Origin: Mustelus asterias
Taxonomy: Eukaryota
Assembly (NCBI RefSeq): GCF_964213995.1
Contig: NW_027590142.1
Coordinates: 62,001-126,000 of the forward strand
Direction of reading: 5' to 3'
Length of the DNA: 64,000 nt
The notes beneath the pieces are model-generated. The model searched no databases, had not been told where the DNA came from, and saw nothing but the letters and a program-made list of their open reading frames with translations. Position 1 is the stretch's first letter. Each line of letters opens with the position of its first letter. Position numbers and translations under genes: made by a program. This document shows, piece by piece, positions 19,388 to 55,865 of this stretch.

Positions 19388-19393
19388 AGTGTG

Positions 19394-19427
<34 letters not shown>

Positions 19428-20906: not shown

Positions 20907-20937
<31 letters not shown>

Positions 20938-20945
20938 GTGCTCGT

Positions 20946-20976
<31 letters not shown>

Positions 20977-21128: not shown

Positions 21129-21149
21129 ACATTTAAAATAAAAATGGAT

Positions 21150-22580: not shown

Positions 22581-23070
22581 ATGGGCATTCTTCTTGTTTT
22601 CAGCCTGTGTGTCTATTTACCCAGTGAGTACTGATCACACTAAACTACATTGTGTGGATTGAATATAAAGCTGCCCCAGTCCATCCCAATTACAGACATT
22701 GTCTGGAGTTTTAGCCCCGTTGTGTGGTTCAGCTCTGATGGGCCTTTAAACTCTCTGTGTTTAATTTCCAGGATCTTTCAGTCAGTCAGTGGTACAGAGC
22801 CCGGCAGCGGTGACCAGAAAGGAATGTCAGTCCCTCACCATCACCTGTGTTTTCTATGGTGGATTCTACGCTCGTGCTTTGGAGAGGGCGGAATTCTTCA
22901 GGCAAACACAGGCTGGGACAGAGCGGGAGCGGATCTCCGGCGGAGGGAGATTTGTTGAGTCGGTGAATAAAGCAGAAAAGACATTTTCGTTGGAAATTCG
23001 GGATGTGAGAGTTGAAGACGCCGCCACCTATTACTGTAAAGCTCATTACAAAGGAGACGGCTGGGACAGT
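22581..23070 (+). CDS. NAR-TCR V gene, already joined to D (leader 22581-22623, V-D exon 22772-23070)
   Basis: Leader MGILLVFSLCVYLP then gtgagt; IgNAR-like V lacking CDR2 (RQTQAGTERERISGGGRFVESVNKAEKTFSL), extra FR1 Cys (RKECQS); YYCKAHYKGDGWDS is followed directly by a 12-RSS. Confidence 0.9.
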
Positions 23071-23098
23071 CACAGTGAAAAGGAGCTGAGCAAATACC
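23071..23098 (+). other. 12-RSS (D-type 3' RSS)
   Basis: CACAGTG, 12 nt spacer, GCAAATACC; near-identical to the 3' RSS of the free D at 52106-52133. Confidence 0.9.
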
Positions 23099-23408
23099 TG
23101 TGCACAATTACCTTATACATTCGCAGAGCCCAGAGAGAGAATTATGGGTTGATGTTATTAGCGCTGCAATCTGGATTAATTACATTGCACTTTCCATCAC
23201 TCACATCTTTCTTTGATATTTTTCTCAGTTAATATGAAGCGACTATCTCCTACCTGGGGATATTTACTGAGAACGCGGGGCCTCAAAAAGAACAGTTTGA
23301 ACTGACAGAGACTTCAAAACATTGAATAATATTTATTGATTTAAATCCCCCGAATAATGGGAACTTCCAAATGACTGTGATGATTTCCCGTCAAGTTGAG
23401 CAGTCGGT

Positions 23409-23499
23409 AGTTCTTGTACGGGGAGACTGAGATCGGTATCAGTGTGTACGACCTGGTATGAAGCCGATGGATCAGGGACGGTGGTGACTGTCACAGCCG
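23409..23499 (+). other. NAR-TCR J segment (23447-23499) with 22-spacer RSS (23409-23446)
   Basis: AGTTCTTGT, 22 nt spacer, CAGTGTG; J reads TTWYEADGSGTVVTVTA plus G, then a gtaagt phase-1 donor. Confidence 0.9.
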
Positions 23500-25478: not shown

Positions 25479-25655
25479 CACAGTGATACAGAACATGGAG
25501 AGAGCTGTACAAAAACCTGGACATGGTGCGTATTACAGACACAGTGATACAGAACACAGAAAGAGCTGTACAAAAAAATGAACATGGTGAAAATCACAGA
25601 CATAGTGATACAGAACACAGAGAGAGCTGTACAAAAACCTTAAAATGGTGAGGTC
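25479..25655 (+). repeat. Three tandem 61-bp units, each containing a 23-RSS
   Basis: Heptamers at 25479, 25540 and 25601; nonamers at 25509, 25570 and 25631. Confidence 0.92.
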
Positions 25656-26572: not shown

Positions 26573-26859
26573 AGAGCATTAACACTCCAGTACCGCAGGA
26601 GGAAACTGTTACACTGGTACCGACTCATCCTGAATCATGCTGGAACCAGCGTCTTGGCAAATCACACAGCTAGGGCTGCAGATATGGCATTTAACTGAAT
26701 AATGGGGCAGGGGGGAGACAAGGACCTGTTGCATGAAAAATTTTTAAAAATCGAAGATGAAGGAGAAGGTTGGACTGCAGGTGAGCGAACATGAAGGCAC
26801 AGAACATGTGAACATCATATTGCACCAAAATCGTGCAAGAATGGGGAAATTTGAAAACA

Positions 26860-31329: not shown

Positions 31330-31954
31330 AGAGTCCCACTGCCCGATACAAACCCTTCACCCCAGGAGAAAGACAACATGTTTTGGCATCTCTGGGAAGG
31401 CTCCATTTACATTTGCAGGATATACACCAGTTGATACGGGCCGCTTGCCCACAGGATAAGTGGAGACTGAGTTACGGAGCGGGTAACGCACCAACCAATT
31501 GGTCCAGAATTACCCATATTAAACGTTAAAGGGGTGAAGGAGCCTCCGAATTTGGGGAGCGACTCTTTCGAGTATACCATGAATGTTCGGGGATGCCCAA
31601 AACTGCCCGAACAGAGAGAGCCTTTTTAAAACATTGAAAGATGGGCTGTCGCCAGCTCACCAAAAAATCCTTAAAATGGGAGTTCTCAATACCCAGACTT
31701 ATGATGAATTAGTAGAATGGGCATCTGGAATTAGAGACGGACCAGATGAGAAACCATACCCACAAATAAAAGAGGAAAATGTTAGTGCAAACAGTGGAGG
31801 AGCTAAACCAAAGGATGCGTGCTATAACTGTGGGAAACCGGGTCACTTTGCCAGAGTCTGTGGGGTTCCAAAGGGAGGTAGAAGGAAGGACCCTGCCGGC
31901 CAGTTTTGCAATAAGTTGGGGGGGGGGGGGGTGGGTGATGCAGAGGGGCAATAA
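31330..31954 (+). pseudogene. gag: ERV gag remnant (capsid C-terminus and nucleocapsid)
   Basis: CYNCGKPGHFARVC is a CX2CX4HX4C zinc knuckle; located downstream of the PBS. Confidence 0.8.
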
Positions 31955-34512
31955 GGGGCCCCCGCAAGTTAGGGTAGGAAGGAAGGTAGAATCTACGTGT
32001 CTGCACTGGTAGGGGAGCCTCCATATCTATCACTGACCTACCCTTACCCATAACGAATAAAATGATCTATGTGAAAGGAATTAACGGACAGAACACCCCT
32101 GCCTACTAAAGAGAAACAAAACAAAGAAGATAGGAGTATTCTTAATACATCAGTTAGCTGGACTAATTGAGCAAGATAAAGAAAAGATTAGAGAGTTAGA
32201 ATCCAGAAGAAGGGAACAAGAGAAACAAAACCACGTATTAGAAGACAAGCAATGGAGAGGGGAAAGTGCTCCTCTACCTCCTAATGAGTCCATACAACAG
32301 GGACCAACCGCTCCTCCAGAGGAGTAGGAAGTGCTAGAACACAACTTAGTGCCAATACCCCGAAGGGGAACAGATGCGCAGCCAAAAGCAAATTATAAAC
32401 CCTTCACCCAGTTTAAAACAGAGACTCAGAGGGAATGCTCCCACTTACTGGAGCAGAATTACCACAACAAAACAGTTAAGAGGGGGGAAGAATGCACGCA
32501 GAAGAGGGATCAATGTATGTGATAATGAGGGAAACCCTAAGACTTGGGAAATGTTGAAATGGGAATGTGAGAAGTATGAGAAGGACAAAAGAGATAGAGC
32601 AGAACAGGAAAGACTGCAAAGGAAAGATAAAAACCCGGAAGTATCTGGCTTGCCAATGTTGTTGCAAACTACCGATACAGATGAACAGGAGGGGGATTGG
32701 TGGAATCGACCCAGTGTAGATAATTACCAGAAATCTAAGGTAGCCGTCATTGCCCCGATTATAATAACGCGCCAGTGCCACTGCAAAGACAGAAGGGACT
32801 CAAATCAGGTAAACTTGGTTCGCTTGAAGCATGATCGAACAAAGAGGGGAGTAAAGCGTCAAAAGGAAACAAGCTGTACGATTCTGTATGGCACAGAGTG
32901 AGACAGAGAGGATGTAATTGTGCAATCGAGAGCCTCATGTGATGGAATAGTGTATAGCAGATCAAAGTGAATTGCTTCTCTGTGTGCGAGTTTAATAAAT
33001 TATTTTCGGGGAAGTGTTAAAACTGTGAGAGATTAAAATGATAAGATTTCTTGAATTTACTTCTGTTTTGAATTTAATTACAGTTTGGAAGACAGAAGAA
33101 TAAAAGCGAATGTTAATCAACGTTCTGTATTGTCAAGTGTTTTACTTTCATCGCAGTTTCAGATGTTAAGTTTGAATGAATGTTGGAAGCTTCCATGTGT
33201 ATCCATATTTAACAAAGTGGATGTTTTGTTGTTGTTTGCTTTAATGTTTTAATGTTAAGGAAGGAGTTAAACCTTGGAAGGACCATGTGCTCTTTCCTTT
33301 GACTTGAAGTTGAAATTATAAAAGAGTTAGTTGAGAGAAGAAAATAAGTAAATTTGTGGAGAAGTAGAAAAGCAGGAACAAAAGAATGAGGTGAATATAT
33401 TGTCTATGCGTCAGTTTAAAGTATATCAAGTTCGTGAAATGAATCGTAGTTCTGATTACTCCAAGTTCCAGCGGGAGATTAATTGATTAAAACCTCAGTT
33501 GTCAATGCAGATAAAGATGTTGTCATTGAATATGTTTAATCTGCATTTGTTGCCAACCATTGAACACCATGATCTGTTGGAACATGAGTTGCCAGTTAGT
33601 TCTAAATAACATTTGGACCAATATGAAATGCAAGGCTTGTATGATGTTGTTTCGTTAACATGCAACAAATTACATCACCTGACATTGACGATAGTTCTGG
33701 CTAGCCCATCCAGAGGAAAACCTGACTACAGTACTAACTTCTGGAGACCAATACCAATACAAATTGCCCAGTAAGAATACAGTATTAAGATCCACAGAAT
33801 AAAGTGATTTACGAACGTCTGATAGTTTAGTATTCTGCAACTGGTTAAAATTATAAACTGCCTTTAGAATTTCATGTGCCTTCTATTATTCAAGGTTTTC
33901 CAAATATAAAAACACTGCAGAGCTTAAAGACTAGCCAGTTAAAAATCAAACCAAAACATTTCTAATCAATTAACTATTGTTATTGTTATATGTATTGTGC
34001 CTGTTATTTTTCTAAAAATGCAGGGATTTTAATCTGGAACTCAGTTTAAAAATAGACAAGACATAAATTAAAAGGGTTTGGATATCACAGTTATGATATA
34101 TAAAGTGGCATGATATAACTGCCGCTCGATTATTATACAGTATAAGCACTGCCATGTAGACCCGAGAATAAAATCAAATCCTGAAAGGCCTTAACCAGTT
34201 TTATGGTATATATTGTGTATTGATAAAACATAATTCTGTAGGAGAAAAGGCGATTTATTCCAAGCTAAATGTTTGTGTTTTAGTGGTACTTTGTGAAGTA
34301 CTATAATGCTTATGCGCAACCAAATTATCAAAATAAATCTAATGAAAGTATACATCACATAAAACTCAGAGCTGTATGGCATGTGATTTTAATGGAGAAA
34401 GCGATGTCTTTTGATAGGATTATATACAAATGAATGGATGTCCAGCTGCAGCCAGTGCAAAGTGTAATTTGATTCAAACTGAGCTTTCTATGGAAGGGGG
34501 ACATGTAATTAA

Positions 34513-34941
34513 ATGTATAATGCACGAGCTAAAGCCATACAGACATTGGGAAAAATGTGGACAAATGTATTGCCCACCATACTAACCACAAACGGGATAA
34601 CCGGATTAACCCCTTATGAACTAATGACAGGACGGGTGATGCAATTACCAGAAAACATCGTAACAGGTGGGACTGATGTTGGTCCGCTCAAAGATAAAAT
34701 CAGGAGATATGATTTGGAACTAAGCACCCAACTAAAAGGAATGTGCAAATTGGTAAAAGACAATCAGGAAATAAGAGACGCAGAGAGAGATCTTGAAATG
34801 CTCCCTGACGTCCCAACAGTGCGACGTCCTAGTGAAAACATTACCTGACAAACCAGGGTTTGCACCAAAATGGAATGGGCGATATGAAGTTATAATTAGT
34901 GGAGTCACCTGTGCCTCATAGACATAAGAGGGAAAGGTATA
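34513..34941 (+). pseudogene. pol: ERV integrase C-terminal remnant
   Basis: WTNVLPTIL, TGLTPYELMTGR and PGFAPKWNGRYEV (GPY/F-like); appears to resume as IWKH after the CR1 insert at ~37986. Confidence 0.75.
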
Positions 34942-37900
34942 TAAGAACATAATAAATAGGAGCAGGAGTAGGCCATCTAGCCCCTCGAACCTGCCCCCCC
35001 ATTCAACAAGATCATGGCTGATCTGAAGCGAATCAGTTTCACTTACCCGCCTGCTCCCCATATCCCTTAATTCCCTTATCGATCAGAAATCTATCTACCC
35101 GTGATTTAAACTTATTCAACGAGGTAGCCTCCACCACTTCAGTGGGCAGAGAATTCCAGAGATTCACTATCCTCTGAGAGAAGAAGTTCCCCCTCAACTC
35201 TGTTCGGAACCGACCCCCACTTATTTTGAGGCTGTGCCCTCTCGTTCTGGATTCCCTTCCAAGTGGAAAGAATGTCTCTACCTCTACCCTATCCAGCCCC
35301 TTCATTATCTTATAGGTCTCTATAAGATCACCCCTCAGCCTTCTAAACTCCAACGAGTACAGACCCAATCTGTTCAATCTCTCCTCATAAGCTACACCCC
35401 TCATCTCCGGTATCAACCTGGTGAACCTTTTCTGCACTCCCTCCAAGGCCAATCTATCCTTTCCCAAATAAGGGGACCAAAACTGCACACATTACGCCAG
35501 TTGCGGCCTCACCAGTGCCTTGTATAGTGGCAGCAAGACCTCCCTGCTTTTATATTCTATCCCCCTCGCGATAAAGGCCAACATTCCATTCGCCTTCTTG
35601 ATCACCTGCTGCACCTGCAGACTGAGTTTTTGCGATTCGTGCACAAGGACCCCCAGGTCCCTCTGCACAGTAGCATGATGTAATTTTTCTCCATTTAAAT
35701 AATATTCCAATTTACTATTATTTCTTCCAAAGTGGATAACCTCACATTTGCCAACGTTATATTCCATCTGCCAGATCCTCGCCCACTCGCTCAGCCTATC
35801 CAACTCTCTCTGCAGACTTACCGCTTTCCCATTCATCTTCGTGTCATCAGCAAACTTTGATACCCTACACTCAGTCCCCTCCTCCAGATCATCTATGTAA
35901 ATGGTAAACATTTGAGGCCCCAGCACCGATCCCTGCGGCACGCCACTCGTCACCAACTGCCAACCAGAAAAGCACCCACTTATTCCAACTCTCTGCTTCC
36001 TGTTAGATAGCCAATCCCCAATCCAAGCCAACACATTACCCCCAACTCCGTGTACCCCAATCTTCTGCAGCAACCTTTTGTGAGGCACCTTATCGAATGC
36101 CTTCTGGAAATCAAAAAACACCACATCCACTGGTTCCCCTCTGTCAACCGCACGAGTCACATCTACATAAAAATCCAGTAAATTCGTCAAACACGACTTT
36201 CCCTTCATGAATCCATGCTGCGTCTGCTTGATTGAACCATTCTTATCCAGGTGCTCTGCTATTTCCTCTTTAATGATGGACTCCAGCATCTTCCCAACTA
36301 CGGACGTCGAGCTAACCGGCCTGTAGTTACCCGCCTTTTGTCTACTTCCTTTTTTTAAACGGCGGCATAACAGTAGCTGTTTTCCGATCAGCCGGCACTA
36401 CCCCAGAGTCCAGCGAATTTTGATAAATAACTACTAACGCATCTGCTATTACCTCAGCCATTTCTTTCAGTACCCTGGGATGCATTCCATCCGGGCCTGG
36501 TGACTTGTCTACCTTCAGTCCCATTAGTCTACCAAGCACTACCTCTTTAGTAGCAGTAATCGTATTAAGGACCTCAACTCCCACCATTAAGGACCTCACC
36601 TCCCTCTCGATCTCTAATATTCGGTAAACTATTTGTGTCTTACACCGTGAAGACCGACACAAAGAACTTATTTAAAGTCTCAGCCGTTTCCTCGTTTTCC
36701 ATTATTAAATCCCCTCTCTCGTCCTCCAAGGTTCCAACATTCACTCTAGCCACTCTATTCCTTTTTGTATATTTGTAAAAACTTTTACTGTCATTTTTTA
36801 TATTTTGAGCTAGTTTAGTTTCATAATCTATCTTTCCTTTCTTCATCGCTTTCTTAGTCGTTCTTTGTTGTTTTTTTAAAGTTTTCCCAATCCACTAATT
36901 TGTTTTCATTTTAATACTCTCCTTTATTTCCTTCGTTATCCATGTCTAGTTATCCCTTTTCTTACAGTCCTTCTTTATCACCGGAATATATTTTTGCTGA
37001 GTACTTAAAAAAATCTCCTTAAAAATCCTCCACTGTTCCTCAGCTGTCCTACCTACCAGTCTGCTCGCCCAGTCTACATTAGCCAATTCCGCCCTCATCT
37101 TATCGTACTCCCCTCTGTTCAAGCAGAGGACACTGGTTTGGGACCCTACTTTCTCACCCTCCATCTGTATCAGAAATTCAACCATATTATGATCACTCAA
37201 CCCAAGAGGATCCCTCGCCAGAAGATCCTTAATTCTACCTGTCTCATTACACAGTACCATGCCTAAGATAACTCGCTCTCTCGTAGGTTCTGTAACATGC
37301 TGTTCAATGAAACTATCCCGACAGCATTCTAAGAACTCTTCCTCAAGCACTCCATGTCCAATTTGAGTCGACCAATCAATATGCAGGTTCAAATCCCCCA
37401 TGATTATTGCCATTCCGTTTTTGCACGCATCCATTATTTGCTTGTTTGTAGCCCTTCCCACCTCTAAGTTATTATTTGGGGGCCAATAGACCACGCCTAC
37501 CAGTGTCTTTTCCCCTCTACTCTTCCTTATCTCCACCCACAACGATTCCACGTTTTGCTCCTTAGAGCCTATGTCGTCTCTCACTACCGTCCTGGTATTA
37601 TCCTTTATTAAAGAGCTACCCCACCTCCTTTTTCTACCTCTCTATCCTTCCTAAATGTCTGATACCCGTGGATATTCAGTTCCCAGTCCCGGTCACCATG
37701 CAACCACGTTTCTGTGATGGCCACTAGATCATAGTCATTTGTATGGATTTGTGCCATCAAGTCATTTACTTTGTTTCGAATGCTTCGTGCATTCAGGCAA
37801 AGTGTCTTTATGCCAGTCTTTATCTGGACCCGGTTGGTTGAAACGCTACTAACATCTCCCGAGCCCTCTACTCCTTTAACTCGTTGAATGTCCTCAACAT

Positions 37901-37985
37901 TAACCTGCACTTGTACTCTCTCCTTTACCTTCGATTTTGTAATTCCCCTTACCCCTACACCCTCCCCCCGATTTAATAGTTTAAA
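34942..37985 (-). mobile_element. ~3 kb CR1 LINE nested in the ERV (APE and RT, frameshifted)
   Basis: LCLNARSIRNK, LVAITETWL, QHGFMKGKSCLTNLL and KFADDTK; 3' tail at ~34942. Confidence 0.92.
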
Positions 37986-38151
37986 TATGGAAACATTAAA
38001 CTCTGCTGAAAGAATATGCTGAAACTAATTGGGAAAATATGTGATATACTCCCATTGCAGGAATGTACAGACAACGACTGACCTCCAAGCAAGCTGAACG
38101 GGTTCGCGGGAAGTTGTATAACGGTCGCGCGGGTTATTAGTAAGAGATAAG

Positions 38152-39574
38152 ATGCTTTTCACGCTGCTTCTCACGACCCTGGCCCTGTCAACCATCGCGG
38201 GAAAGTATAGATGGAATTATGAGGATTTAGGGGTAAAGCACAGTGATCATCTCTGTAATGATGACTCTGTCTATTGTATGAACACCTTTGTGTATATGTC
38301 TTATCTGTATGCATCACAATCGAATCTGAGCAAGTGCTGGGTCTGTTCACACATTCCCATGCACGGAAGAAAGGGAGGAATTCCTTTATTCCCTATCCCT
38401 TTATCAGCTCTGGAAATAAAGAATGTATTTTAAATCAGAATGGAACCCAGGAATGGAAAAGGAAACTACATTTAAAACCCCATCGGGTACCACCATGCAG
38501 GACACGTTTAATATCAGCAACAGTGATGTTGTTTTCGGGCTAGGGGGCGGAGGGTGCACTTTATCGACCTTTAAGAAATATTACCAACCCAGCTACGACA
38601 GATCAGGATCTCCACCCTACTTCGTTGTGAAAAATCAACAAAGGGGATCTACCTGCCTGACAAGAAATGGAACGATACCTGCTGGCCGTCGCTACTGTAT
38701 ACAAGAGACTGATATCACGAATGACACTTGGGCCATGGTACAGGTCACAATCCAGTGCCCCACAGCCACCGTCCCGGTTAGTCTCTCCTCCGCTTATGTG
38801 AGCAGGATGACTGCATATAATGGTACCTATTTTGTCTGTGGAACCAATGCCTATCCATGGCTTCCCTGGAATTGGGCAGGATCATGCTACTTGGCATATG
38901 TGGTGCCTCATATTCACCATTACACTGACTTACGGGACCACCCCGAGATACACCTGCTTAGGGCTAAGCGAGCCATTAGTGAGACAGAACGGTTCTTCAT
39001 GATAGCCTACCCACTTTATGGGACAGAAAAGGCTGCACAGGAACTGATACGGATGGCCTCGACCCCAGAGAGAATTGCAAATGAGACTAAAGATGGGTTC
39101 GAGGAGGTGAGCACGGCCATCTCTGAAATATCAGCAGAGGTCGTAGCTATTCGGACTGTGGCGTTACAGAACCGATTGGCACTCGATTATGTGCTCGCCT
39201 CCCAAGGAGGAACATGTGCTATAGTTGGCTCCGAATGCTGTACGTATGTTCCCGATGCTTCGGAGAATATAACTCGCTTGGCAGATCACATTAAACATGT
39301 GGCGAAAACAATGCAGGATGAGGGGAACCAATATCACAATTATAACCCTCCGGGATGGCTGGGGCAATGGTTTGGGTCGTGGTGTGCATAGCTGATGCAT
39401 GGATTGATTGTATTAATTGTAATTGTAATTACCTGCTATGTTTGTATGGCATTGTTGAACACCTGTTGCAAAATAGGAACAGCGCGGATTATGCCGGGCA
39501 CAAGTGTACAGGCAGAGGGGGCAGACCACCTGACAAAGGAGGTAGGCCCATTCGCTGATAACATATGGTTCTGA
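38152..39574 (+). pseudogene. env: ERV envelope, gamma-type; one frameshift (~38425) and one stop (39389-39391)
   Basis: Signal peptide MLFTLLLTTLALS, CWVC (CXXC), furin site RAKR, ISD LQNRLALDYVLASQGG, CX6CC; hydrophobic TM LIVLIVIVITCYVCMALL after the stop. Confidence 0.92.
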
Positions 39575-40670: not shown

Positions 40671-42592
40671 ATGGATCACCCACGAGAGTTAAATGTTTTC
40701 ATTCTAGCAGCAATCATCTCAGGTGAGTAACACTTCAGATTCGCATTGATTACCTCGCAATAAAAACTTTTATTCTTCCACATTTAATGTTGCTTTTTGG
40801 AGAAAAACTAGAGCAATATTCGCAGTTGTTGAATTGGCGGCATTTTGACATAATGTTTAGCATTGCTGCCTCACAGCGCCAGGGACCCGGATTCGATTAC
40901 CGGCTTGGGTCACTGTGCAGAGTCTGCATGTTTCTCCCATGTCTACATGAGTTTCTTCTGGGTGCTCTGGTTTCCTCCTGCAGTCCGAAAGATGTGCTGA
41001 TTAGGTGCACTGGCCGTGCTGATCTCTCCCTCAATGTAACCGAACAGGCGCTGGAGTGTGGCGACTCGGGGATTTTTACAGTAACTTAATTGCAGTGTTA
41101 ATATAAACCTTGTGACACTGATAAATCAACTTAACTGAATTATTCTCATTGATTTCCTTTCAGGAAATTATTTTACATTCTTATATTTAATGTTGATCTT
41201 ACGAGACAAGTGCACAACAATATTACTGGCGACTGATTTTTTTTAATTATTGGGATTTTACAAATAGTTGTTTAAAAGCTTCAGCAGTGAGAAAAGGCAA
41301 ACCTATCATAGATATGAACAGTTCACCAAACACATCTTCGACATACCTTCCAGACCCAAAACATCCCGCACTTGGAAGGAAATTTGCTGCTGATGGACAC
41401 GAAAAGCATCGCCTGCAGTATTCCCTCCGATCCACACATATCCATGAAGCTAGAATCACCTTTCTATGACTGTCGCTGTGTTAAAACCATTGGGGACACC
41501 ACCTTCCCTCTGAAAGTACTGTTGAGTGTGCCTTGTGCATCTGCACACGCAGCACTCCAGGAAAACAGTTCCACACTCTCTTCTCAAGGGCGGCAAATTA
41601 GCATGGGCAGAAATCCTGGCTCAGTCTCGCGACTCTCATATCCCAGGACAGAATAAATCACAGAGTCGTTAGTGTGGGATTTAGGCGAAGCCTTTTTATT
41701 TCCTTAAGTGAATGGTGAGAACGTGGAACTGTTGAACATGGAAAATGTGACGTGAACGGTGTTTATGTATTTCAGGGGGCTATCGGGTGGAGAGAAAGAG
41801 TAATAGGCGGCTCATCTCATAGTGTGAGAAGAAGTGGGGTTGGGGTGAATGAACACCAGCAAAAGCCCATGGGCCGAATGGCCTGCTACTGCGTTAACAA
41901 ATTTGAAATCTAATTAAAAACATGGCCTGTTATCAACTCAAATTGCATCCCACGCCTCATTAGGTTTTGGATACATGTTGCAGATATTGACCTAGCCAGA
42001 TCTTAAATCTCCAAGTCTCTGGCCAGGCGGCACACCAAGAGGCTGGAGACGCATCACCGCCCTCCAGCTCAGCTTCGTGCAATGGTACTGATGCACTCAC
42101 AGGGCAAAATCGCGACTGCTGGCTACCTCCAAGGGCAGCACGATGCCTACAGGCGGAACTGGGGCCGCCCTCCATTGGGCCCACGATCCTCCCCCTCCCC
42201 CGCGCCTCCCCAGTTTCAAATCGACATAGTGCCTGGAACCTCCACTTAATTCTCATTTTCTCTCCCCTTCAGGTAGCCTGGCTGCATCCGCAGTCATACA
42301 CCAGCCAGAGGCAGAAGTGATGGTCCAGCAGGGAGCCACCACGACAATCACCTGCTCCTACACAGAGGTGGAGAGGGCTTGCTTGGTCTGGTACCGGGAA
42401 CCTCTCCACCCAGCCATGGGAGGGAGTCCCGAGTATATTCTCGTCCGCTGCACCGACGGTTTCAGCGACAGCGCCACATTTTCCAGGCGTCGCTTTTCCT
42501 CCTCCCTGAGCAAAACTTACAGAAGCATCAGTCTGACAGTTGCACCCGTGACAGCTGAGGACTCCAGGAAATACTTCTGCGTCTTAAACACA
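40671..42592 (+). CDS. Divergent TCR alpha/delta-type V gene, apparently intact (putative leader 40671-40722, V exon 42273-42592)
   Basis: TATAAA at 40611; leader MDHPRELNVFILAAIIS-G then gtgagt; V reads SAVIHQPEAEVMVQQGATTTITCSY...CLVWYRE...VRC...EDSRKYFCVLNT; leader-V pairing is inferred from phase. Confidence 0.8.
40855..41130 (+). mobile_element. HE1-family SINE, degenerate, in the V intron
   Basis: gctgcctcacagcgccagggacccggattcga; same subtype as 5775. Confidence 0.7.
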
Positions 42593-42631
42593 CACACTGG
42601 CATATTCCGGGCAGCAGTCTCTGCATAAACT
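42593..42631 (+). other. 23-RSS, variant
   Basis: CACACTG, 23 nt spacer, GCATAAACT. Confidence 0.75.
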
Positions 42632-46100: not shown

Positions 46101-46576
46101 ATGAGCATGATGCTAGCGATATTTCTCTGTGTGTTCCTTGTCATCTTATCTTGTGAGTAGTTGGATATTATCAGAAAATTTGCACAGTTTCTGTTTGACA
46201 TCAATCATTCCCTGTGCAGTGACACAAACTGGATTCACCTCACCATAATTATTGTTTCTTCCCTTTAGCAGGCGTCCAGTCGGATGTGGTGTTGACCCAG
46301 CCAGAGGCAGAAACGGGGGTAGTAGGGCAATCCCTGACCCTAACCTGTAAAACCAGCGGATTTGATATTGGGAGCTTCATCATGCTCTGGTACCGGCACA
46401 GTCCTGAGACGGGACTGGGATGGCTGCTTTGGTACAATAATGAAAATAGCAAGGATTACAATCAGGAGCTTGGTGGACGATTCATTGCATCCAAGGACCT
46501 TTCCAACAACGTATTCGATCTCTCTGTCAGCACGTTAACAATAGCAGACAGCGCGACGTATTACTGTGCACAGCAG
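46101..46576 (+). CDS. Intact IgH-like V gene inside the TCR V array (leader 46101-46152, V exon 46272-46576)
   Basis: Leader MSMMLAIFLCVFLVILS then gtgagt; VQSDVVLTQPEAETG...LTCKTSGFD...GRFIASKDLSNNVF...YYCAQQ matches shark IgM/IgW VH framework motifs. Confidence 0.9.
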
Positions 46577-46615
46577 CACAGTGATATAGATCACATCCAG
46601 ACTTGTACAAAAACC
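46577..46615 (+). other. Consensus 23-RSS
   Basis: CACAGTG, 23 nt spacer, ACAAAAACC. Confidence 0.95.
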
Positions 46616-47854
46616 CACAAGAGGAATTGCAGCCATTTCCCTGCTTTTCTTTCCATTCATGGGATGCCCACGCTTAATTTTCCATGAATTGAATGGTTTC
46701 TTAGGTCATTTCAAATGGTGCTTGAGAGTCAACCGCATTGTTGCGTGGATATGCCGTCACATGTAAGCAAGATCAAGTAAGGAAGGCAGATTTCCTTCCA
46801 TAAAACGACATTCGTGAATCAGATTATTCTTCACGACAATCGACAATGGTTTCATGGTCATCATTAGATCTTTGCTTTCAGATTTTTATTGAATTCAAAT
46901 TTCAGCATCTGCCTTTGTGGGATTCAAGCCCCATTTGCACAGTAATTATTCCATTGCTCTAAGGTTCTTATGTGGAACTTGCTACCACAGGGAGTAACTA
47001 AGGCAAATCGCACAGATGCATTTAAGGGGAATCTAGTTAAGCATACGAGGGAGAGGGAAACCTAAAAATATATTGATCGGATTGGATGAAGAACATTGGA
47101 GGAAAGGTCATCCGCGGCAATAATATCAGTACGTTGGAACGACCGAATGACCGGCATCTGTGTGTCGACTCTATGAGTCGATGTTTCTGTTGCATTGATG
47201 AGTGCGTTCTGTTCATTGTGCCACCAGAGAGCATTGGGAGAGCAATGGCATTGAGAGCATTGACAAGCAAATAGATTAGCTACCGTTTTTTCTTCCACTA
47301 TTGAGCAAAGGTATACACGCGAGACGAATGAAACAACCGAGAAGCGCGACTGACTCTTCCTGATCCAGTCTGACAGAATTACACAGAGCTGTTGGTGAAG
47401 GACACTCACGCGGAGTTCAGGCCAGATAGCTGATCATTGAATGTGGATGCACCCTGTGAATCTTGACCAGGACCAGAATAGACGAAAGAAAAGCAAGTTT
47501 CTTCTGAAACTGAGGAATTCGAAAGGTTATTCCTTACTGCTAAACATGCGGATTATGTATTGAAACGTTTCTGATTGTCAGACGCAATGTGACAATGTGT
47601 GCTCTTCACTAATACTAAGTAACTGAAAGCAGCAGATTATTTCGATGGCTATTGAGATAATCATTGTCGCAGTGTGAACTTAGGTTCGCTCACAATAGTG
47701 GGTCCATGCGCATCCTTTTAGCCACATGCTTAATGTTAATTTCACATGGCGCATATTTCATGCACGGTTGTTTCAAACATAAAAACTGCGCAAATACCTG
47801 CTCACAAAGCTGTTTTGATTTGCCCAGGATGGAACAATACAACAAAACTTGCAA

Positions 47855-49480: not shown

Positions 49481-51668
49481 ACTCGTGTCGAGAATAATGA
49501 ACACCTTGAATATATTCCATTCTCAACGAAAGTCATCACTCAGGAAGCAGCCAACACCCATCCATGTCTCACCCTTCAGAGCAAAGCTCTGTAAGGATAA
49601 CATCCTGCAATTATGTGTGGAGTCTGGAGAAACTGAGCTGACACAGAATATTCGCCATCCAAATTCGTATTTATATGGAATACCCAAGGAGAGATAATTG
49701 CATTGGCAGGAAGGCAGGTGTCAAAATCACGCAGATTTAAATGATTTGCACTCGTTTCTGGTTGTTCAGGAGCCATTTAGTTAGAGTGGGGGAGCCGGTT
49801 CGTTAGTGATTTTCAAAGGGGAGTACGTTCAGTATTTACAATGTCAACATTGTAAATATTATGTGTCAATTGCAGGGAGGTGGAAACATGTCGAAAAGGG
49901 GTTGAGTGATGGAATCTTCCATCCTGGTAGAACAGAAGGTTTATAGGAAGAACATCACTTTGGACTTCTTCTCCATGTCTGATCTCATCCTGACCTAACA
50001 ACATGTGTCCGCTCATTGATGGTTGTGGGTTTTCAATACTGGGATATGGGCAGTTGATAGGCCACTGGTATTGACACTAGATTAGCGACTCAGGGACCCA
50101 GGTTACTAAGTCGGGCGGGTACCCAAGTTCAAATCCGAACAAGGCAGATGATGAAATTTGAAGTAAATAAAAAAACCATTGAGACCATTGTCGATTGTTG
50201 TCAAAACCCATCTTGTTTACTAATGCCCTTTTAGGGAAGGAAATGAGCCTAAATGTGACTCCAGAAACACAGCAATATGGTTGGCTCTTAAAGGTTTCTG
50301 GTCAATGGATTCCCCCAGGATTTTTCAGCTATGAAAGAAGCATTTAGATGACCACCTGACACGCCTTATATACAAGGTTATGGACCAAGAGCTGGAAGAT
50401 GTGATTGGAATGGATACATGTTTGATGGCTAGCACAGACAAGACGGGCTGAAGGTCTGGAGAAGTTTATGACTCTTTGACTAACTCGACAGCTCCCCTTT
50501 CAAATCAGCCATGGGACATTAAACGCCCAACAGACAAGGCAGGCTGTTTGATACCTCGTCTAAACATTGATGAGTGACATTGCAGAACTTCCTCAACACA
50601 AACAGAAAATGCTAGAAAATCTCACAGCTCTGACAGCATCTGTGGGGAGCGAATAGTGCACACGTTTCGAGTCTAGATGACCTTTCGCTAGCTCTGACGA
50701 AGGGTTCTCTAGACTCGAAGCAAAAACAGAAAATTCTGGAAAATCCCAGCAGGACTGACAGCATCTGTGAAGAGAAAATGGAGTCAAGGTTTTGAGGCTG
50801 GATAACATAGAACCAAGCTTACTTGGTCTGACTCCAGATGCACAGCAAGGCTTGCCATCTGGAATGATCTAACAACTCTCCGGTTTCCTCCTACAGTCCG
50901 AAACATGTGCTGGTTAGGTGCATTGACCATGCTAAATTGTCCCTCAGTGTACCCGAACAGGTGCCAGGGTGTGGCGACGAGGGGATTGTCACAGTAACTT
51001 CACTGCAGTGTCAATGTAAGCCCAGCTGTTGCACTAATTAATAAACTTTAAACAATCCATTCAATTCAGGGCAATTAGGGATGTGAGCGAAGTCCTCACC
51101 CCTTGAGATAATAAATAAAACCAAAACCGATTCACCTACTTCTCATCAAATCCTTCGATGGATGCCCTTCTCACCGTCTCTGGAATCGTCTCCAACCTGT
51201 GTTCTTTTTCAATCTGTTGTTTCTATAGTTTTTGCCTTTTGAAAGTGCCCCTAATTCTTTTCGCCCCTCAATCCGCAACTATGCCTTCAATTGCCTTGTT
51301 CCTGAGCTGGGGAATTCTCTAGGTTAATTCCTCACCGCCCCGCCTGCCCGCCCCCCCCCCCACCCCTCCCCCAATCCCCCCCTCCCTCATCCCCGCCCAC
51401 TTTTCCACCTCAGCTTCCTTACCTCCGTTCCTTTAAAAATTTTCCTGAAAAATTACCCCAACCGCAGAACATCCTGCTGGTTATCTAACCCCTACAGGTG
51501 CGTTGTGCCAAATATGTTTAGCCAGTGCTCATGTGAAATCACATGGACGGTTTTAATCGGGTGCGTTGCTTCATGGGAGTAGAATTGATAGTTGCATCAA
51601 TCAGCGACATTCTGCTGTCGCAGCTGAAATGATACATGCGACAACAGTAGCAGCAACAGCTGCTGAAG

Positions 51669-51734
51669 AGTTTTTGTGCTGGCATGTATCACTGTGCACA
51701 GTGATGGGCCTCGGCTTCCCATCATACTAAAACT
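51669..51734. other. Precise RSS signal joint (12-RSS fused heptamer-to-heptamer with a 22-RSS)
   Basis: AGTTTTTGT, 12 nt, CACTGTG | CACAGTG, 22 nt, ACTAAAACT. Confidence 0.92.
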
Positions 51735-52060
51735 CTCACTGAAGATTTTCACATAAACAAATGAAAAAGCGGAGTTAATCTTCCCTGAAACCCGCACAGT
51801 TCCATCGCACACCGTCAATCCCACAGTCACGTTTATAATGAGGATTTGATTATTACCGTTAACATTCTGAGTGTTTTAAACAAGGAGTGTGTGCGGAAGC
51901 TGACATCTTTCCCGGGTTAGGTGTTGATGAATGAAGAATGGAAATGACTGATCCCAGTTACAAACCCAAACAAAAGATGGGATCATCGTCTCTCAGCTGG
52001 AACTGGGAACCGCAGTCCCCGCTGTTTAATTAATTTCCCTACATCTCACACAGTATCTGG

Positions 52061-52133
52061 GGTTTTGATGCTAAATTATAACACTGTGTAAATGGTTAGG
52101 AGAGTCACAGTGAAAAGAAGCTGAGCAAATACC
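52061..52133 (+). other. Unrearranged NAR-TCR D segment (52089-52105, taaatggttaggagagt) with 12/12 RSS
   Basis: GGTTTTGAT, 12 nt, CACTGTG, D, CACAGTG, 12 nt, GCAAATACC. Confidence 0.9.
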
Positions 52134-52480
52134 TGTGCACAATTACAATATACATTCGCAGGGCCCAGAGAGAGAATTATGGATTGATGTTATTAGCGCT
52201 GCAATCTGGATTAATTACATTGCACTTTCCATCACTCACATCTTTCTTTGATATTTTTCTCAGTTAATATGAAGCGACTATCTCCTCCCTGGGGATATTT
52301 ACTGAGAACGCGGGGCCTCAAAAAGAACAGTTTGAACCGACAGAGACTTCAAAACATTGAATAATATTTATTGATTTAAATCCCCCGAATAATTGGGAAC
52401 TTCCAAATGACTGTGATGATTTCCCGTCAAGTTGAGTAGTCGGTAGTTCTTGTACGGGGAGACTGAGATCGGTATCACTG
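52106..52480 (+). repeat. Direct near-identical copy of the D-J intervening DNA at 23071-23444, ending in a truncated J 22-RSS; J is absent
   Basis: Colinear with few substitutions and one indel; nonamer 52445-52453, 22 nt spacer, CACTG, then inverted V. Confidence 0.92.
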
Positions 52481-52962
52481 GCCGTCTCCTTTGTAATGAG
52501 CTTTACAGAAATAGGTGGCGGTGTCTTCAACTCTCACATCCCGAATTTCCAACGAAAATTTCTTTTCTGCTTTATTCACCGACACAACAAATCTCCCTCC
52601 GCCGGAGATCCACTCCCGCTCCGTTCCGGTCTGTGTTTGTTTGAAGAATTCCGCCCTCTCCAAAGCACGAGCGTAGAATCCACCATAGAAAACACAGGTG
52701 ATGGTGAGGGACTGACATTCCTTCCTGGTCACCGCTGCCGGGCTCTGTACCACTGACTGACTGAAAGATCCTGGAAATTAAACACAAGAGAGTTTAAAGG
52801 ATCATCAGAGCTGAACCACACAACGGGGCTAAAACCCCAGACAGTGTCTGTAATTGGGATGGACTGGGGCAGCTTTATATTCAATCCACACAATGTAGTT
52901 TAGTGTGATCAGTACCCACTGGGTAAATAGACACACAGGCTGAAAACGAGAAGAATTCCCAT
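52481..52962 (-). pseudogene. Second NAR-TCR V(D) copy, inverted; ORF open but RSS heptamer broken (leader 52962-52920, exon 52770-52481)
   Basis: Near-identical to 22581-23061 (YFCKAHYKGDG); adjacent heptamer reads GCCAGTG and lacks the essential CAC. Confidence 0.85.
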
Positions 52963-53314
52963 CGCTCTGCTGCCCGGAGCTGATGGTTGATATGACGGGG
53001 AGCTGGAGACTGCAGAGCTGGACTGCTCTGGGACACTGGATCTCAGAGCGGAACTGAAAGACATCAGGCCCGAACGTCGTCAATTTTGGCCACGCCCATT
53101 GTTTAAAATAAATCTCGAGAATCTAAAGGTGGCGGAAAGCTATGAACATTCAGTCAAGGTTCCATAGTTATCGCTGCCTCGGAGCTCCCGACCCGAGAAT
53201 CTCGTCCCGCGACTCCTCTGGCTGTTGCCACCCAGAGTTTGGGAATGTCCCTCTTTGTCAAAAACAAGTAAGATTCTTATTCTTTTATTTTTTTTCAGTG
53301 TCCAAGTGCAGAGA

Positions 53315-53341
53315 TAACCCTAACCCTAAGCCTAACCCTAA
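53315..53341. repeat. Short interstitial telomeric repeat (TAACCC)x~4.5
   Basis: taaccctaaccctaagcctaaccctaa. Confidence 0.85.
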
Positions 53342-54292
53342 TGAGTGCTGGGTCCACTGTTATTTGTCACTTATATTAATGATTTGGATGAGAATTTAGG
53401 AGGCGTGGTGTGATTTGCAGATGACACCAAGATTGGTGGCATAGTGGACAGTGAAGAAGGTTATCAAGGATTGGGCTAGTGGACTGATGAATGGAAGATG
53501 AAGTTTTATTTAGATGAATGCAAGGTGATCCAAATTGGTCGGTCGAACCAGAACAGGACTTACTCATTTAATGGGAGGGTGTTATGGAAAGCTATAGAAC
53601 AAAAGGATCTCAGGGTACAGGTTCATAGTTCCTTGAAAGTGGAGTCTCAGGTGGACAAAGTGGTGAAGAAGGCATTCAGCATGCTTGGTTTCATCAGTCA
53701 GAACATTGAATACGGGTGTTAGGACGTCTTGCTGAAGTTGCACAAGACATTGGTAAGGCCACATTTTGGATACTGTGTATAGTTCTTGTCAACCTATTAC
53801 AGAAAGGATATTATTAAACTAGAAATAGTGCAGAAAAGATTTACTAGGATGCTACCAGGACTTGATGGTTTGAGTTATAAGGAGAGGCTGGATATACTGG
53901 GACTTTTTAGGGTTGATCTTATAGAGGTCTATAAAATAGCGAGGGCATCGATCAGTTTGATGGTCAACATATTTTCCAAAAGGCGGGAGAGTCTACAACT
54001 AGAGGGCATAAGTTTAAGTTGAGAAGGGAGAGATACAAGAGGGTCCAGAAGGGCAATTTTTAACAAAGAGGGTGGCGAATGCCTGGAACAAACCGCTAGA
54101 GGCCGTAGTAGAGGCGGATACAATTTTGTCTTTTAAAAAGATTTTGGACAGTTCCATGGGTAAAATGAGTATGGAGGGATATGGGCCAAACGTGGGCAAT
54201 TGGGACTAGCTTAGTGGTTAATAAAAGGGCGACATGGACAAGTTGGGCCAAAAGGCCTGTTTCTATGCTGTAAACGTCTATGACTCTATGAC
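53342..54292 (+). mobile_element. CR1 RT and 3' end, twin of 21400-21956
   Basis: Shares NRTYSFNGRVLW and EQKDLRVQVHSS variants with the 21.6 kb copy. Confidence 0.85.
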
Positions 54293-55005
54293 TGCGGAAC
54301 ACACAGGGTGAAGTGAGTGTGATAGACACTAGCTTCAAGAAGGTTTCACACCACAAGTCCAGACAGATAGATGGGTGACTGCCAGGACAGGCAGGCATAT
54401 AATGCAGGAGTCTCCTGTGGCGCTTCCCCTCTCAAACAAGTATACCGTTTTGGATACTGTTGGGGAGGTGGTGGGGTGGAGGGGGTGGGGGGAATAACCT
54501 CTCAGGGGAAAATACCAGCAGTAGCCAGGCCTGTGGCACCACAACTGGTTCTGCTGTAGAGCAGGGTCGAGCTAAGTTCAAGCGAGTTAAAGTTGTAGGA
54601 GACTCGATAGCCAGGGGCACAGTCAGGCGTTTCTGTGGCAGCGACAGACATTCTAGGATGCTGTGGTCCCTCGCTGGTTCCAGGGTCCTGGGTGTCTCTG
54701 AGCAGGTACAGGCATCCTGAAACGGAAGGGTGAACAGATAGATGTCATTGTCCATATTGGCACGAATGACAGAGGCAGGAAAGGGGAAGAGGTCCTGTGA
54801 AGAAAATTCAGGGAGTTAAGTTGAGAGCTAAGAGCAGGACCTCTGGGGTAGTAATCTCAGGATTACCGCCCCCCCCCCCGCCGCCCCCGCCATGCCACGT
54901 GCTAGTGAGGCTTGCAACAGGGAGATAATACAGTTGAATACGTGGCTGAAGAGCCGGTGTATGAGGGAGGGCTTTAGAGATATGAATCACCGGGATGTTT
55001 TCAGG
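54293..55005 (+). mobile_element. CR1 ORF1 (SGNH/GDSL esterase) fragment
   Basis: VVGDSIARGTVRRFCG and VIVHIGTND motifs. Confidence 0.7.
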
Positions 55006-55134
55006 CAACTGAAGGATCTTATTGGAGGATTGTGCTATATTTTTCTTGTTCCTATTATTTTATTTTAATACAATTTAATGCAAATGAACCTATTCACAGA
55101 ATCGATACCAATCTCAGGAACAGCGATAGGCGAA

Positions 55135-55420
55135 CTCGAAGACATACACACACGAACACATTCACAAACTCAAACAGACACACGAAAACTCACAGGCACA
55201 CACACAAACACATATACGGATATACACAATCTCAGACAAGCAGCTGCAGGCAAACTGGCAGACACACACAAACACATTCACGGACGCACACAGACATGCA
55301 AACAAAAACACAGACTTACATAAACACAAGCACAGACACACACTCACAGACATGCAGACAAACAGACAAACACATAGACATGCACACCATCAAACGCACT
55401 CTCATAAACAGAGAGACAAA
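55135..55420. repeat. CA-rich low-complexity tract
   Basis: Degenerate (CA)n; inverted counterpart of the TG tract after 19345. Confidence 0.8.
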
Positions 55421-55865
55421 CTGAGACAATGAAGGGTTGAAGTCAATTTCACTCTAATCCACCTGCTGGGCACTAAGATAATAAGAGAAGCAAATCTAAA
55501 GCTCGTTGTGTTGGGTTTGTTGTGAAATGAGAAAAAGTATAAATATACCGCATAGCTCAGAATGGGACTGGAATTGATGATTTCTCAGCTGTCTGTGATC
55601 TCTTTGAACAAATATAGAATTGGAGAGATTTTAACGCGTGAATTGTAATATCTAATGGCGTAAAGTATCTGGGTGCAGAGTGGATTTGATAAAGGCTGGA
55701 AGACAGACTGAGGTAATGAGATTGAAGCTGCTGTTCTGAGTGAATGGTTTTTTTGCAGGGAGCGATGGATGGGGGAGAGAGGGATGGATGGAGAGAGGGA
55801 GGGAGAGTGAGATGGATGGAGGAAGAGATGGATCGATAGGGGTGAATGTGAGAAGCTGAAGTTTA

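What the first reader, a model, noticed from the sequence alone, without database searches (positions are those of the whole stretch)
52445..52500. Hybrid joint: J signal end welded to an inverted V-D coding end
Seen: the plus-strand copy of the D-J spacer runs to the J 22-RSS and stops at CACTG, two heptamer bases short. It then continues directly into the minus-strand NAR V, whose CDR3 is 9 nt shorter than copy 1 (it lacks tgggacagt). Both breakpoints lie within a few bases of RAG cut sites. Known: inversion-oriented substrates can resolve by deletion into signal-to-coding hybrid joints, often with trimming. Inference: a V-D with its 12-RSS and a facing J with its 22-RSS were cut, and the DNA between them (J and probably a supporting V-delta) was deleted.
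Basis: partly seen in the sequence, partly recalled or inferred. Interest (0 to 1): 0.88.

Follow-up and report, generated by a model that had tools for sequence, protein, structure and literature searches.

The report
Inverted NAR-TCR interval with RAG scars
In a shark T-cell-receptor locus, the whole stretch between a NAR V gene and its J is turned around and closed by two joints that look like work of the V(D)J recombinase; it would be a rare heritable record of that enzyme re-cutting its own products, but no public reads confirm it.

Summary
At 52480/52481 a direct copy of the D-J spacer of cassette 1 (97%) ends at CACTG, two letters short of a full J-type heptamer. It runs straight into an inverted NAR V (96%) that lacks TGGGACAGT.

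The joint is an RSS fused to a foreign coding end. But the V need not have been a V-D with a 12-RSS. Contigs of two other organisms show that NAR V genes natively carry the 22-spacer RSS now found at 51697, followed by the sequence 51735-52060. That RSS sits 784 bases to the left, in a perfect 12/22 signal joint.

So 51697-52480 is the complete V-to-J interval (V-RSS, V-D spacer, free D with two 12-RSSs, D-J spacer, J-RSS), inverted relative to its V. One end is a signal joint, the other a trimmed RSS-to-coding joint: the two products of one inversional reaction. J and the supporting V are absent.

My best model is two standard 12/23 reactions:
- The J-RSS first formed a signal joint with a foreign 12-RSS.
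- That joint was then re-cut against the V's own RSS.

Weakness: the best of 20 listed runs holds only 0.51 of the sampled words, and no listed contig bridges either joint. Germline status and assembly are therefore unverified.

The scan noted a similar "RAG-type inversion" in a NAR-TCR cassette on another piece of this genome (unchecked).

The parts
51669..51696 (+). 12-spacer RSS '12f' (nonamer 51669-51677, spacer 51678-51689, heptamer 51690-51696). It is foreign to the cassette and its original coding partner is gone from the window.
   Evidence: heptamer 7/7, nonamer 8/9. In run X19 a 200-nt contig matches 51515-51696 with 0 differences and then has 18 letters unlike the window (record 18).
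51690..51703 (.). Signal joint: two heptamers fused head to head without loss or gain.
   Evidence: 1 match in the window against 0.01 expected (100 shuffles). The spacers are 12 and 22.
51697..51734 (+). 22-spacer RSS '22e', the RSS type that NAR V genes carry natively.
   Evidence: joints 'opposite strands': 51697 to 52484 (X18, X19) and 51697 to 52488, 52493 and 52494 (X2). (heptamer 7/7, nonamer 7/9).
51735..52060 (+). V-D intervening sequence (X').
   Evidence: It is contiguous with V and RSS 22e in contigs of organisms H and A (records 3, 10, 19, 30). It has no paralogue in the window.
52061..52088 (+). 5' 12-spacer RSS of D ('12d').
   Evidence: An organism A contig spans it together with D, RSS 12a and B (record 29).
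52089..52105 (+). Unrearranged D segment, 17 nt.
   Evidence: It is flanked by two 12-RSSs. In organism A it is 7 letters longer while the flanks are kept (table 4). Its last 7 nt match the end of the cassette 1 V-D with 1 mismatch.
52106..52133 (+). 3' 12-spacer RSS of D ('12a').
   Evidence: It is homologous to 23071-23098 of cassette 1.
52134..52444 (+). D-J intervening sequence (B), a direct copy of that of cassette 1.
   Evidence: 10 substitutions and 1 single-letter gap over 52099-52480.
52445..52480 (+). J-type 22-spacer RSS '22b', with its heptamer cut to 5 letters.
   Evidence: Cassette 1 has the same nonamer and spacer, a full heptamer and then J.
52480..52481 (.). RSS-to-coding junction (hybrid or pseudo-hybrid joint).
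   Evidence: The direct and inverted homology meet here with no shared letters.
52481..52770 (-). NAR-TCR V exon of cassette 2, an open frame with no usable RSS.
   Evidence: Pfam V-set, E 9.3e-9, 35.9 bits against a cut-off of 26; 4 homologues.
52920..52962 (-). Leader exon of cassette 2.
   Evidence: Read by homology with 22581-22623 of cassette 1. The donor is GTGGGT.
52771..55752 (-). Upstream region of cassette 2, collinear in inverted order with 19030-22771.
   Evidence: 96.2%, 89% and 74.7% blocks.
22772..23499 (+). Cassette 1, used for comparison: V joined to D (22772-23070), 12-RSS (23071-23098), D-J spacer, 22-RSS (23409-23446), J (23447-23499). The supporting V lies at 25187-25478.

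Best explanation
Cassette 2 was once an ordinary NAR-TCR cassette on the minus strand. Its order was V with a 22-RSS, V-D spacer, D with two 12-RSSs, D-J spacer, 22-RSS, J, then a supporting V-delta. Two standard 12/23 reactions of the RAG recombinase changed it. In the first (inferred), the J-RSS paired with a foreign 12-RSS (12f) that faced away from it. The J, the supporting V and whatever lay between were lost on a circle, and a signal joint 12f/J-RSS stayed in the chromosome. In the second, the V's own 22-RSS paired with 12f, which lay in the same orientation, so the reaction went by inversion. The two true signal ends gave the perfect signal joint at 51696/51697. The two 'coding' flanks were the V end and the J-RSS heptamer that abutted 12f. 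They were processed like coding ends and gave the trimmed joint at 52480/52481, a pseudo-hybrid joint. The result is a V exon locked to a headless RSS with no J: a dead cassette that preserves both products of the reaction. Shown: the anatomy, and the native V/RSS pairing in relatives. Inferred: the order of events, the lost partner of 12f, RAG as the agent, and that the change is heritable.
For: (1) 51697-52480 is bounded exactly by two 22-RSSs. It holds V-D spacer, free D and D-J spacer in cassette order. (2) It is inverted relative to its V. In contigs of two other organisms, V runs into RSS 22e and X' (joints 51697 to 52484 in X18 and X19; 51697 to 52488, 52493 and 52494 and 51724 to 52492 in X2). 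(3) One end is a precise 12/22 signal joint (1 found, 0.01 expected). The other end is an RSS-to-coding joint with 2 letters lost. That is the pair of products of one inversional reaction. [quoted passage not shown] (4) Both arms differ from cassette 1 to the same degree: 10 substitutions in 382 nt of B, and 16 in 529 nt of non-coding upstream sequence. This is as expected if they come from one cassette. (5) The window holds one J and one supporting V, both in cassette 1. (6) A homologue ends ...KAHYKYD, one letter, then a heptamer (P0004). So the end ...KAHYKGD of cassette 2 is about a full germline V end, not a V-D remnant. (7) Germline RAG products, including one hybrid-joint inversion, are on record for shark Ig clusters (PMC2193153 and PMC2193156, passages).
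Against: No independent data show the structure. The best of 20 listed runs holds 0.51 of 144 sampled words. None of the 32 listed pieces (of 4,440) bridges 52480 or 51696/51697. In runs X17 and X18 only cassette-1 letters are seen at 4 of the 9 listed diagnostic places of the inverted arm (52802, 53050, 53156, 53214); in X19 this holds at 3 of them, with no depth at 53156. The window's own letters are absent at the listed places of X' between 51789 and 51904 in X17, X18 and X19, and at 51917-51924 in X17 and X18. The first step left no trace, and the old partner of 12f is unknown. Cassettes 1 and 2 share three letters after GAC. The contig of organism H does not seem to have them, which would also fit descent of both from one V-D joint. 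A P-nucleotide can explain only the third letter. The source tissue of the assembly is unknown, so a lymphocyte origin is not excluded.
Confidence: 0.5

Rival explanations
1. Two cassettes lay head to head. A germline-joined V-D with its 12-RSS (like cassette 1) and the facing J with its 22-RSS were cut. The signal end of J was joined to the V-D coding end (a true hybrid joint) and everything between was deleted. The signal joint at 51696/51697 is a separate event that removed the V of the left cassette.
For: Cassette 1 shows that such V-D/12-RSS genes exist here. Cassettes 1 and 2 share three letters beyond GAC, where the organism H contig leaves V, as if both descend from one V-D joint. The pairing obeys 12/23. 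Hybrid joints 'also exhibit base loss and addition' (PMC2193153, passage).
Against: It needs a third cassette and treats the signal joint 784 nt away as a coincidence. It expects the D-J spacer (from the unjoined cassette) to differ more from cassette 1 than the V arm does. Observed are 2.6% against 3.0% substitutions, though the power is weak. It also needs 9 nt of coding-end loss plus 2 nt of signal-end loss. The V end matches the length of a native germline V end (P0004).
Confidence: 0.2
2. Hybrid joints first. The RSS-bounded V-J interval was inverted in place by two hybrid joints (V to J-RSS, V-RSS to J), as in the documented shark D1-D2 case. The J, now carrying the V-RSS, later recombined with 12f, leaving the signal joint and losing J.
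For: It gives the same final anatomy. There is precedent for inversion of an RSS-terminated interval in the shark germline (PMC2193153, passage).
Against: The first step pairs two 22-spacer RSSs, against the 12/23 rule, and needs two hybrid joints at once.
Confidence: 0.1
3. The structure is not heritable. It is a somatic rearrangement from lymphocyte DNA, or a chimeric read, that entered the assembly.
For: No listed run holds the stretch. In X19 the flank of 12f continues differently (record 18). Several RAG-type oddities are noted across this assembly by the scan (unchecked). NAR-TCR cassettes are RAG targets in thymocytes.
Against: Both arms carry their own substitutions (3-4% from cassette 1), so a real paralogue exists. 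Assemblers follow the majority of reads, and each T-cell clone is rare. A misjoin would need shared sequence at 52480/52481, and there is none. The window holds no N. Organism H may simply be another species or lack this paralogue.
Confidence: 0.15
4. The V of cassette 2 carries its native RSS and V-D spacer, with only the first two heptamer letters mutated. Cassette 1 is then the derived one, made by inversional V-D joining and a second deletion.
For: On the minus strand the region reads as V, 22-RSS, about 310 nt, D, about 330 nt, 22-RSS, a normal-looking cassette. The letters CAGTGA lie in the same reading-frame register as the heptamer of homologue P0004.
Against: In 6 joints from 3 runs of two organisms, V is followed by RSS 22e and X', not by 22b and B. 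A paralogous V contig (records 5 and 12) runs on for 278 letters unlike B. In cassette 1, RSS 22b is followed by a bona fide J with a splice donor.
Confidence: 0.03
5. An inverted segmental duplication made without RAG, whose breakpoints fall at RSS borders by chance.
For: Cassettes 1 and 2 are inverted duplicates about 30 kb apart.
Against: Three breakpoints lie within 0 to 3 nt of heptamer borders. One of them is an exact heptamer-to-heptamer fusion. RSS-like sites cover a fraction of a percent of the window.
Confidence: 0.02

Closest known systems
Germline hybrid-joint inversion between D1 and D2 of shark IgH clusters (described in Lewis and Wu 2000, PMC2193153, passages read)
   Same: An RSS-terminated intervening sequence is inverted in the germline of a cartilaginous fish. 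An RSS ends up on a coding segment that is not its own.
   Different: Here the whole V-J interval with a free D is inverted, in a NAR-TCR cassette. Only one end is an RSS-to-coding joint. The other end is a perfect signal joint with a foreign 12-RSS, and J is lost.
Re-cutting and reinsertion of signal joints in thymocytes: new signal joint plus pseudo-hybrid joint (PMC6620893, passages read; PMC1820826 seen only as listing and abstract)
   Same: The same pair of products bounds the moved DNA: a precise signal joint and a processed RSS-to-coding joint, with 12/23 obeyed.
   Different: The known cases are somatic and act in trans on an excised circle. Here the joint that was re-cut would have been chromosomal (in cis, by inversion), and the product sits in a genome assembly.
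Germline-joined Ig genes of sharks (Lee et al. 2000, PMC2193156, passages read)
   Same: RAG-type products fixed in germline DNA of clustered antigen-receptor genes. Cassette 1 of this window is such a V-D join.
   Different: Those are coding joints made by deletion, so the signal joint is lost. Here the signal joint is kept and no useful gene results.
Inversional V(D)J joining with the signal joint kept on the chromosome (Ig kappa; PMC6620893, passage)
   Same: The topology is the same: the inverted segment is bounded by a signal joint and the reciprocal joint.
   Different: The reciprocal joint here is not V-to-J but V-to-RSS.

Membership tests
NAR-TCR cassette (doubly rearranging TCR delta) | The NAR V has a leader, a Cys in the a-b loop, and no Trp in the 'WYRK' motif (features as given in PMC1845163, passages). 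| tested here: met
   Leader exons at 22581-22623 and 52920-52962. The translation has ...RKECQSLTITC... and ...EFFKQ.... Pfam V-set. 4 homologues, one from Chiloscyllium punctatum.
NAR-TCR cassette (doubly rearranging TCR delta) | Its own J with a splice donor, followed by a leaderless supporting V-delta with a Cys in CDR1. | tested here: not met
   Met for cassette 1 (J 23447-23499 and donor; V 25187-25478 with ...SGFCQY...). Not met for cassette 2: there is no second J or supporting V in the window. Cassette 2 is a remnant, not a working member.
V(D)J signal joint | Exact heptamer-to-heptamer fusion of one 12-spacer and one 23(22)-spacer RSS, with nonamers in place. | tested here: met
   51690-51703, spacers 12 and 22, nonamers 8/9 and 7/9.
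Hybrid or pseudo-hybrid joint | An RSS joined to a coding end that is not its native partner. | tested here: met
   RSS 22b belongs to J in cassette 1. V natively carries RSS 22e in relatives.
Hybrid or pseudo-hybrid joint | Imprecise processing at the joint, and a reciprocal signal joint at the other end of the moved DNA. | tested here: met
   2 heptamer letters are lost. The signal joint lies 784 nt away, at the other block end.
Hybrid or pseudo-hybrid joint | Made by RAG1/RAG2 and end joining. | not testable with these tools
   Inferred from the anatomy only.
RAG-mediated transposition | A signal-ended fragment inserted at a non-RSS target with a 5-bp target duplication. | tested here: not met
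   The flanks are an RSS heptamer on the left and the V end on the right. The 5 letters on either side are not repeated (read).
Germline (heritable) rearrangement | The same junctions in independent individuals or in non-lymphoid DNA. | tested here: inconclusive
   Best holder 0.51 of words. No listed bridging contig, and cassette-2 letters are missing at several places in organism H. The species of the runs is coded.

The most novel reading that the evidence does not exclude
This is a heritable fossil of signal-joint re-cutting. Shark germ cells ran RAG at least twice on one NAR-TCR cassette. The second reaction used a chromosomal signal joint as substrate, inverted the complete V-J interval and killed the cassette. 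The event is young enough to be absent from, or polymorphic in, close relatives: the flank of 12f continues differently in another sample. Together with the V-D join of cassette 1, this would make the NAR-TCR array a place where ongoing germline V(D)J recombination, including its by-product reactions, can be read directly from genomes.
Probability: 0.35. Interest if true: 0.7.

Novelty: new variant of a known kind. Interest (0 to 1): 0.55.

Why it matters
Germline activity of the V(D)J recombinase is the accepted source of the pre-joined Ig genes of cartilaginous fish. It is also invoked for RSS swapping and for the birth of D segments. The record so far consists almost wholly of coding joints, because deletion discards the reciprocal product. 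A locus that keeps both products of one reaction would show three things:
- Chromosomal signal joints are re-used as substrates outside lymphocytes.
- The 12/23 rule held in those events.
- Such reactions destroy cassettes as well as create them.

It also gives a concrete, PCR-sized test for presence or absence among individuals and sister species. If the structure proves somatic or an assembly artefact, it is a caution about antigen-receptor loci in assemblies made from blood or lymphoid tissue.

Tried and rejected
1. Native-RSS reading: the V of cassette 2 carries its own RSS and cassette 1 is derived. I took this seriously because the minus strand reads like a normal cassette and because homologue P0004 has its heptamer in the same register. 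I rejected it after one search showed V followed by RSS 22e and X' in two organisms.

2. RAG transposition, or reinsertion of an excised circle closed by a 22/22 signal joint. There is no target duplication. The target would have to be a V-D with RSS 12f, but the D of this family carries RSS 12a.

3. A zero-length D1 of an IgH-like V-D1-D2-J layout at 51696/51697. There is no V or 23-RSS within the unique 640 nt to the left. The native contigs put V directly on RSS 22e.

4. Search for a second J, a second supporting V, or a paralogue of 51056-52105 in the window. None was found.

5. The read-through tail of P0001 as a clue to a native V flank. It has no significant match.

6. Literature on the genomic layout of NAR-TCR. 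Criscitiello 2006 and Ott 2021 are not held. Four searches listed no paper on signal or hybrid joints in NAR-TCR cassettes. The figures and supplements of Criscitiello 2006 may bear on the native RSS layout, and I could not see them.

7. Fetching DNA around the four homologues.

Full report
WHAT THE WINDOW IS. The window is a stretch of a cartilaginous-fish TCR alpha/delta-type locus. It holds V segments with 23-spacer RSSs on both strands (7232-7753 plus strand, 10440-10862 minus strand, 25187-25486 plus strand, 46286-46687 plus strand) and two NAR-type V genes. My RSS scan finds 21 sites, against 2.5 (sd 1.9, largest 10) in 100 first-order Markov simulations. The two NAR V exons score as Pfam V-set. 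They have the features listed for NAR-TCR V in PMC1845163 (passages): a leader, a Cys in the a-b loop, and no Trp in the WYRK motif. A protein search gave 4 homologues among 9 candidates, one from the bamboo shark Chiloscyllium punctatum.

CASSETTE 1 (plus strand). The order is leader 22581-22623, then V joined to D (22772-23070), a 12-RSS (23071-23098), a D-J spacer, a 22-RSS (23409-23446), J (23447-23499) with a GTAAGT donor, and 1.7 kb on a leaderless supporting V (25187-25478) with a Cys in CDR1.

THE OBSERVATION. 52099-52480 is a direct copy of 23064-23444 (97.1%, 382 nt). 52481-53315 is an inverted copy of 23061-22231 (96.2%, 835 nt). Inverted collinearity goes on to 55752.

WHAT LIES TO THE LEFT. 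Reading leftwards on the plus strand, the arm is the last part of a complete set:
- 22-RSS '22e', 51697-51734
- a unique 326-nt spacer X', 51735-52060
- 12-RSS '12d', 52061-52088
- a free 17-nt D, 52089-52105
- 12-RSS '12a', 52106-52133
- the D-J spacer B, 52134-52444
- 22-RSS '22b', 52445-52480

The heptamer of 22e abuts the heptamer of another 12-RSS ('12f', 51669-51696) with no loss or gain. The 14-letter fusion occurs once, against 0.01 expected.

WHICH ARRANGEMENT IS NATIVE. On the minus strand the region reads as a normal cassette: V, 22-RSS, spacer, D, spacer, 22-RSS. So I had to ask whether V next to 22b is native and cassette 1 is the derived one. I therefore laid public contigs on 51060-53330 at 80% likeness.

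Results for the native arrangement:
- In organism H, one contig each in X18 and X19 passes from the V end (52484, V sense) straight into 51697 and on through X' into D. Record 19 has 450 nt and 16 differences over 51697-52096.
- In organism A (X2), joints link 51697 to 52488, 52493 and 52494, and 51724 to 52492.
- Another organism A contig spans 12d, D, 12a and B. It has 7 extra letters inside D only (record 29, table 4).
- A paralogous V contig (records 5 and 12) runs on for 278 letters unlike B.

In the window, the whole V-J interval (51697-52480) is inverted relative to its V.

MECHANISM. An inverted segment bounded by a precise signal joint at one end and a processed joint at the other has the topology of one inversional V(D)J reaction. 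The signal joint uses 12f and 22e. So the reciprocal joint must unite their two flanks: the V end, which is the native flank of 22e, and whatever abutted 12f. That flank is the heptamer of 22b.

This means 12f and 22b earlier formed a signal joint themselves. Such a joint is the expected product if the J-RSS paired with a 12-RSS facing away from it, and that reaction removes J and the supporting V on a circle. Both steps obey 12/23 and use only standard chemistry. In the second step the 22b heptamer is handled as a coding end, which explains the loss of two letters.

The same pair of products, a new signal joint plus a 'pseudo-hybrid joint' with imprecise processing, is described for re-cutting of signal joints in thymocytes (PMC6620893, passages). 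A germline inversion of an RSS-terminated interval by hybrid joints is on record for shark IgH clusters (PMC2193153, passages). Germline RAG activity in sharks is argued in PMC2193156 (passages).

- The arms differ from cassette 1 alike: 10 substitutions in 382 nt of B, and 16 in 529 nt of non-coding upstream sequence.
- The V end of cassette 2 has the length of a native germline V end. Homologue P0004 ends ...KAHYKYD plus one letter before its heptamer, and cassette 2 ends ...KAHYKGD plus three.
- The 9 'missing' letters are then simply the D part of cassette 1.

Against this, cassettes 1 and 2 share three letters after GAC, and the organism H contig appears not to have them (51 letters beyond the aligned part, 49 of them placed on V). 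That would fit common descent from one V-D joint. If the germline V ends two letters after GAC, the third letter is the palindromic letter that either joint would add, but that end is not shown.

WHAT THE READS DO NOT SHOW.
- No listed run holds the stretch. The best, X17, has 0.51 of 144 sampled words.
- Of 4,440 pieces only 32 are listed, and none bridges 52480 or 51696/51697.
- In X17, X18 and X19, every contig at the listed variant places of X' between 51789 and 51904 carries the other letter; at 51917-51924 this holds in X17 and X18 only.
- At 4 of the 9 listed diagnostic places of the inverted arm (52802, 53050, 53156, 53214), X17 and X18 show only the cassette-1 letter. X19 shows the same at 3 of them and has no depth at 53156.
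- The main B contig of organism H carries cassette-1 letters at 52183, 52287 and 52393, and runs on for 63 letters unlike the window after 52477, as cassette 1 does into J (record 4).
- A weaker set of contigs (about 37 of 121 depth in X17) keeps the window's letters in B.
- In X19 the left flank matches 51515-51696 without a difference and then continues with 18 letters unlike the window (record 18).

So organism H, whose name is coded, either is another species or lacks this paralogue. It has 12f with a different right-hand flank, though 18 letters are too few to show what that flank is. This is compatible with a young or lineage-specific event. It gives no support for the assembled structure.

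AGAINST A PLAIN MISASSEMBLY. Both arms have their own substitutions. There is no shared sequence at the joint that could mislead an assembler. All three breakpoints sit at RSS borders. A lymphocyte origin of the reads cannot be excluded without the assembly's own data.

VERDICT. The joint is real in the sequence and is of RAG type. I put about 0.8 on the general statement: an RSS-to-coding joint, reciprocal to or associated with the signal joint, in a cassette that lost its J. I put 0.5 on the specific two-step model with a heritable product. It is a new variant of a known kind, germline V(D)J products in cartilaginous fish, and is so far unverified by independent reads. The scan noted a similar inversion in another NAR-TCR cassette of this genome (unchecked).

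Noticed in passing
window 25474-25651: Behind the supporting V of cassette 1, a 61-nt unit is repeated 2.9 times, giving three 23-spacer RSSs in tandem (heptamers at 25479 and 25540, and one more unit on)..
   Followed up: partly
window 53315-53341: A telomere-like repeat, TAACCC x 4.5, lies exactly where the 96% inverted homology to cassette 1 stops. It takes the place of the roughly 274 nt of cassette 1 (21957-22230) that have no counterpart here.
   Followed up: partly
window 23041-23098, and records 3, 10, 19: Cassette 1 is a germline-type V-D join. Organism H has a single-copy, unrearranged V / 22-RSS / spacer / D contig, 96% like the spacer of cassette 2. No contig there is near-identical to the window's spacer. 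So joined and unjoined states differ between close relatives.
   Followed up: partly
window 52089-52105, against run X2: The D segment is 7 letters longer in organism A (insertions behind 52092, 52093 and 52098), while both flanking RSSs and the spacers align. D coding sequence evolves faster than its signals (table 4).
   Followed up: no
window 31583-39391: A retrovirus-like element. It has a gag-like ORF with a CCHC knuckle (31583-31954) and an env-like ORF (38423-39391). It is split by LINE reverse-transcriptase ORFs on the minus strand (35492-37910).. Described only.
   Followed up: no
window 42317-42628: A V-like ORF (...EDSRKYFC...) without any RSS in my scan. It may be a V pseudogene or a V with a decayed signal.
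   Followed up: no
window 26598-26648 (minus strand): A weak J-like remnant (...GTSVTVSS) with a stop inside. tblastn E 0.66 against the NAR J; it may be chance.
   Followed up: no
window 51288-51439: A C-rich low-complexity tract draws thousands-fold contig depth and many back-joints in all four runs. It is a repeat that would trouble read mapping just left of the signal joint (tables 2, 5, 7).
   Followed up: no
window 10440-10862 (minus strand): An ordinary TCR V with a 23-RSS (heptamer first base at 10527) lies inverted relative to its neighbours. Inversional joining is therefore built into this locus.
   Followed up: no
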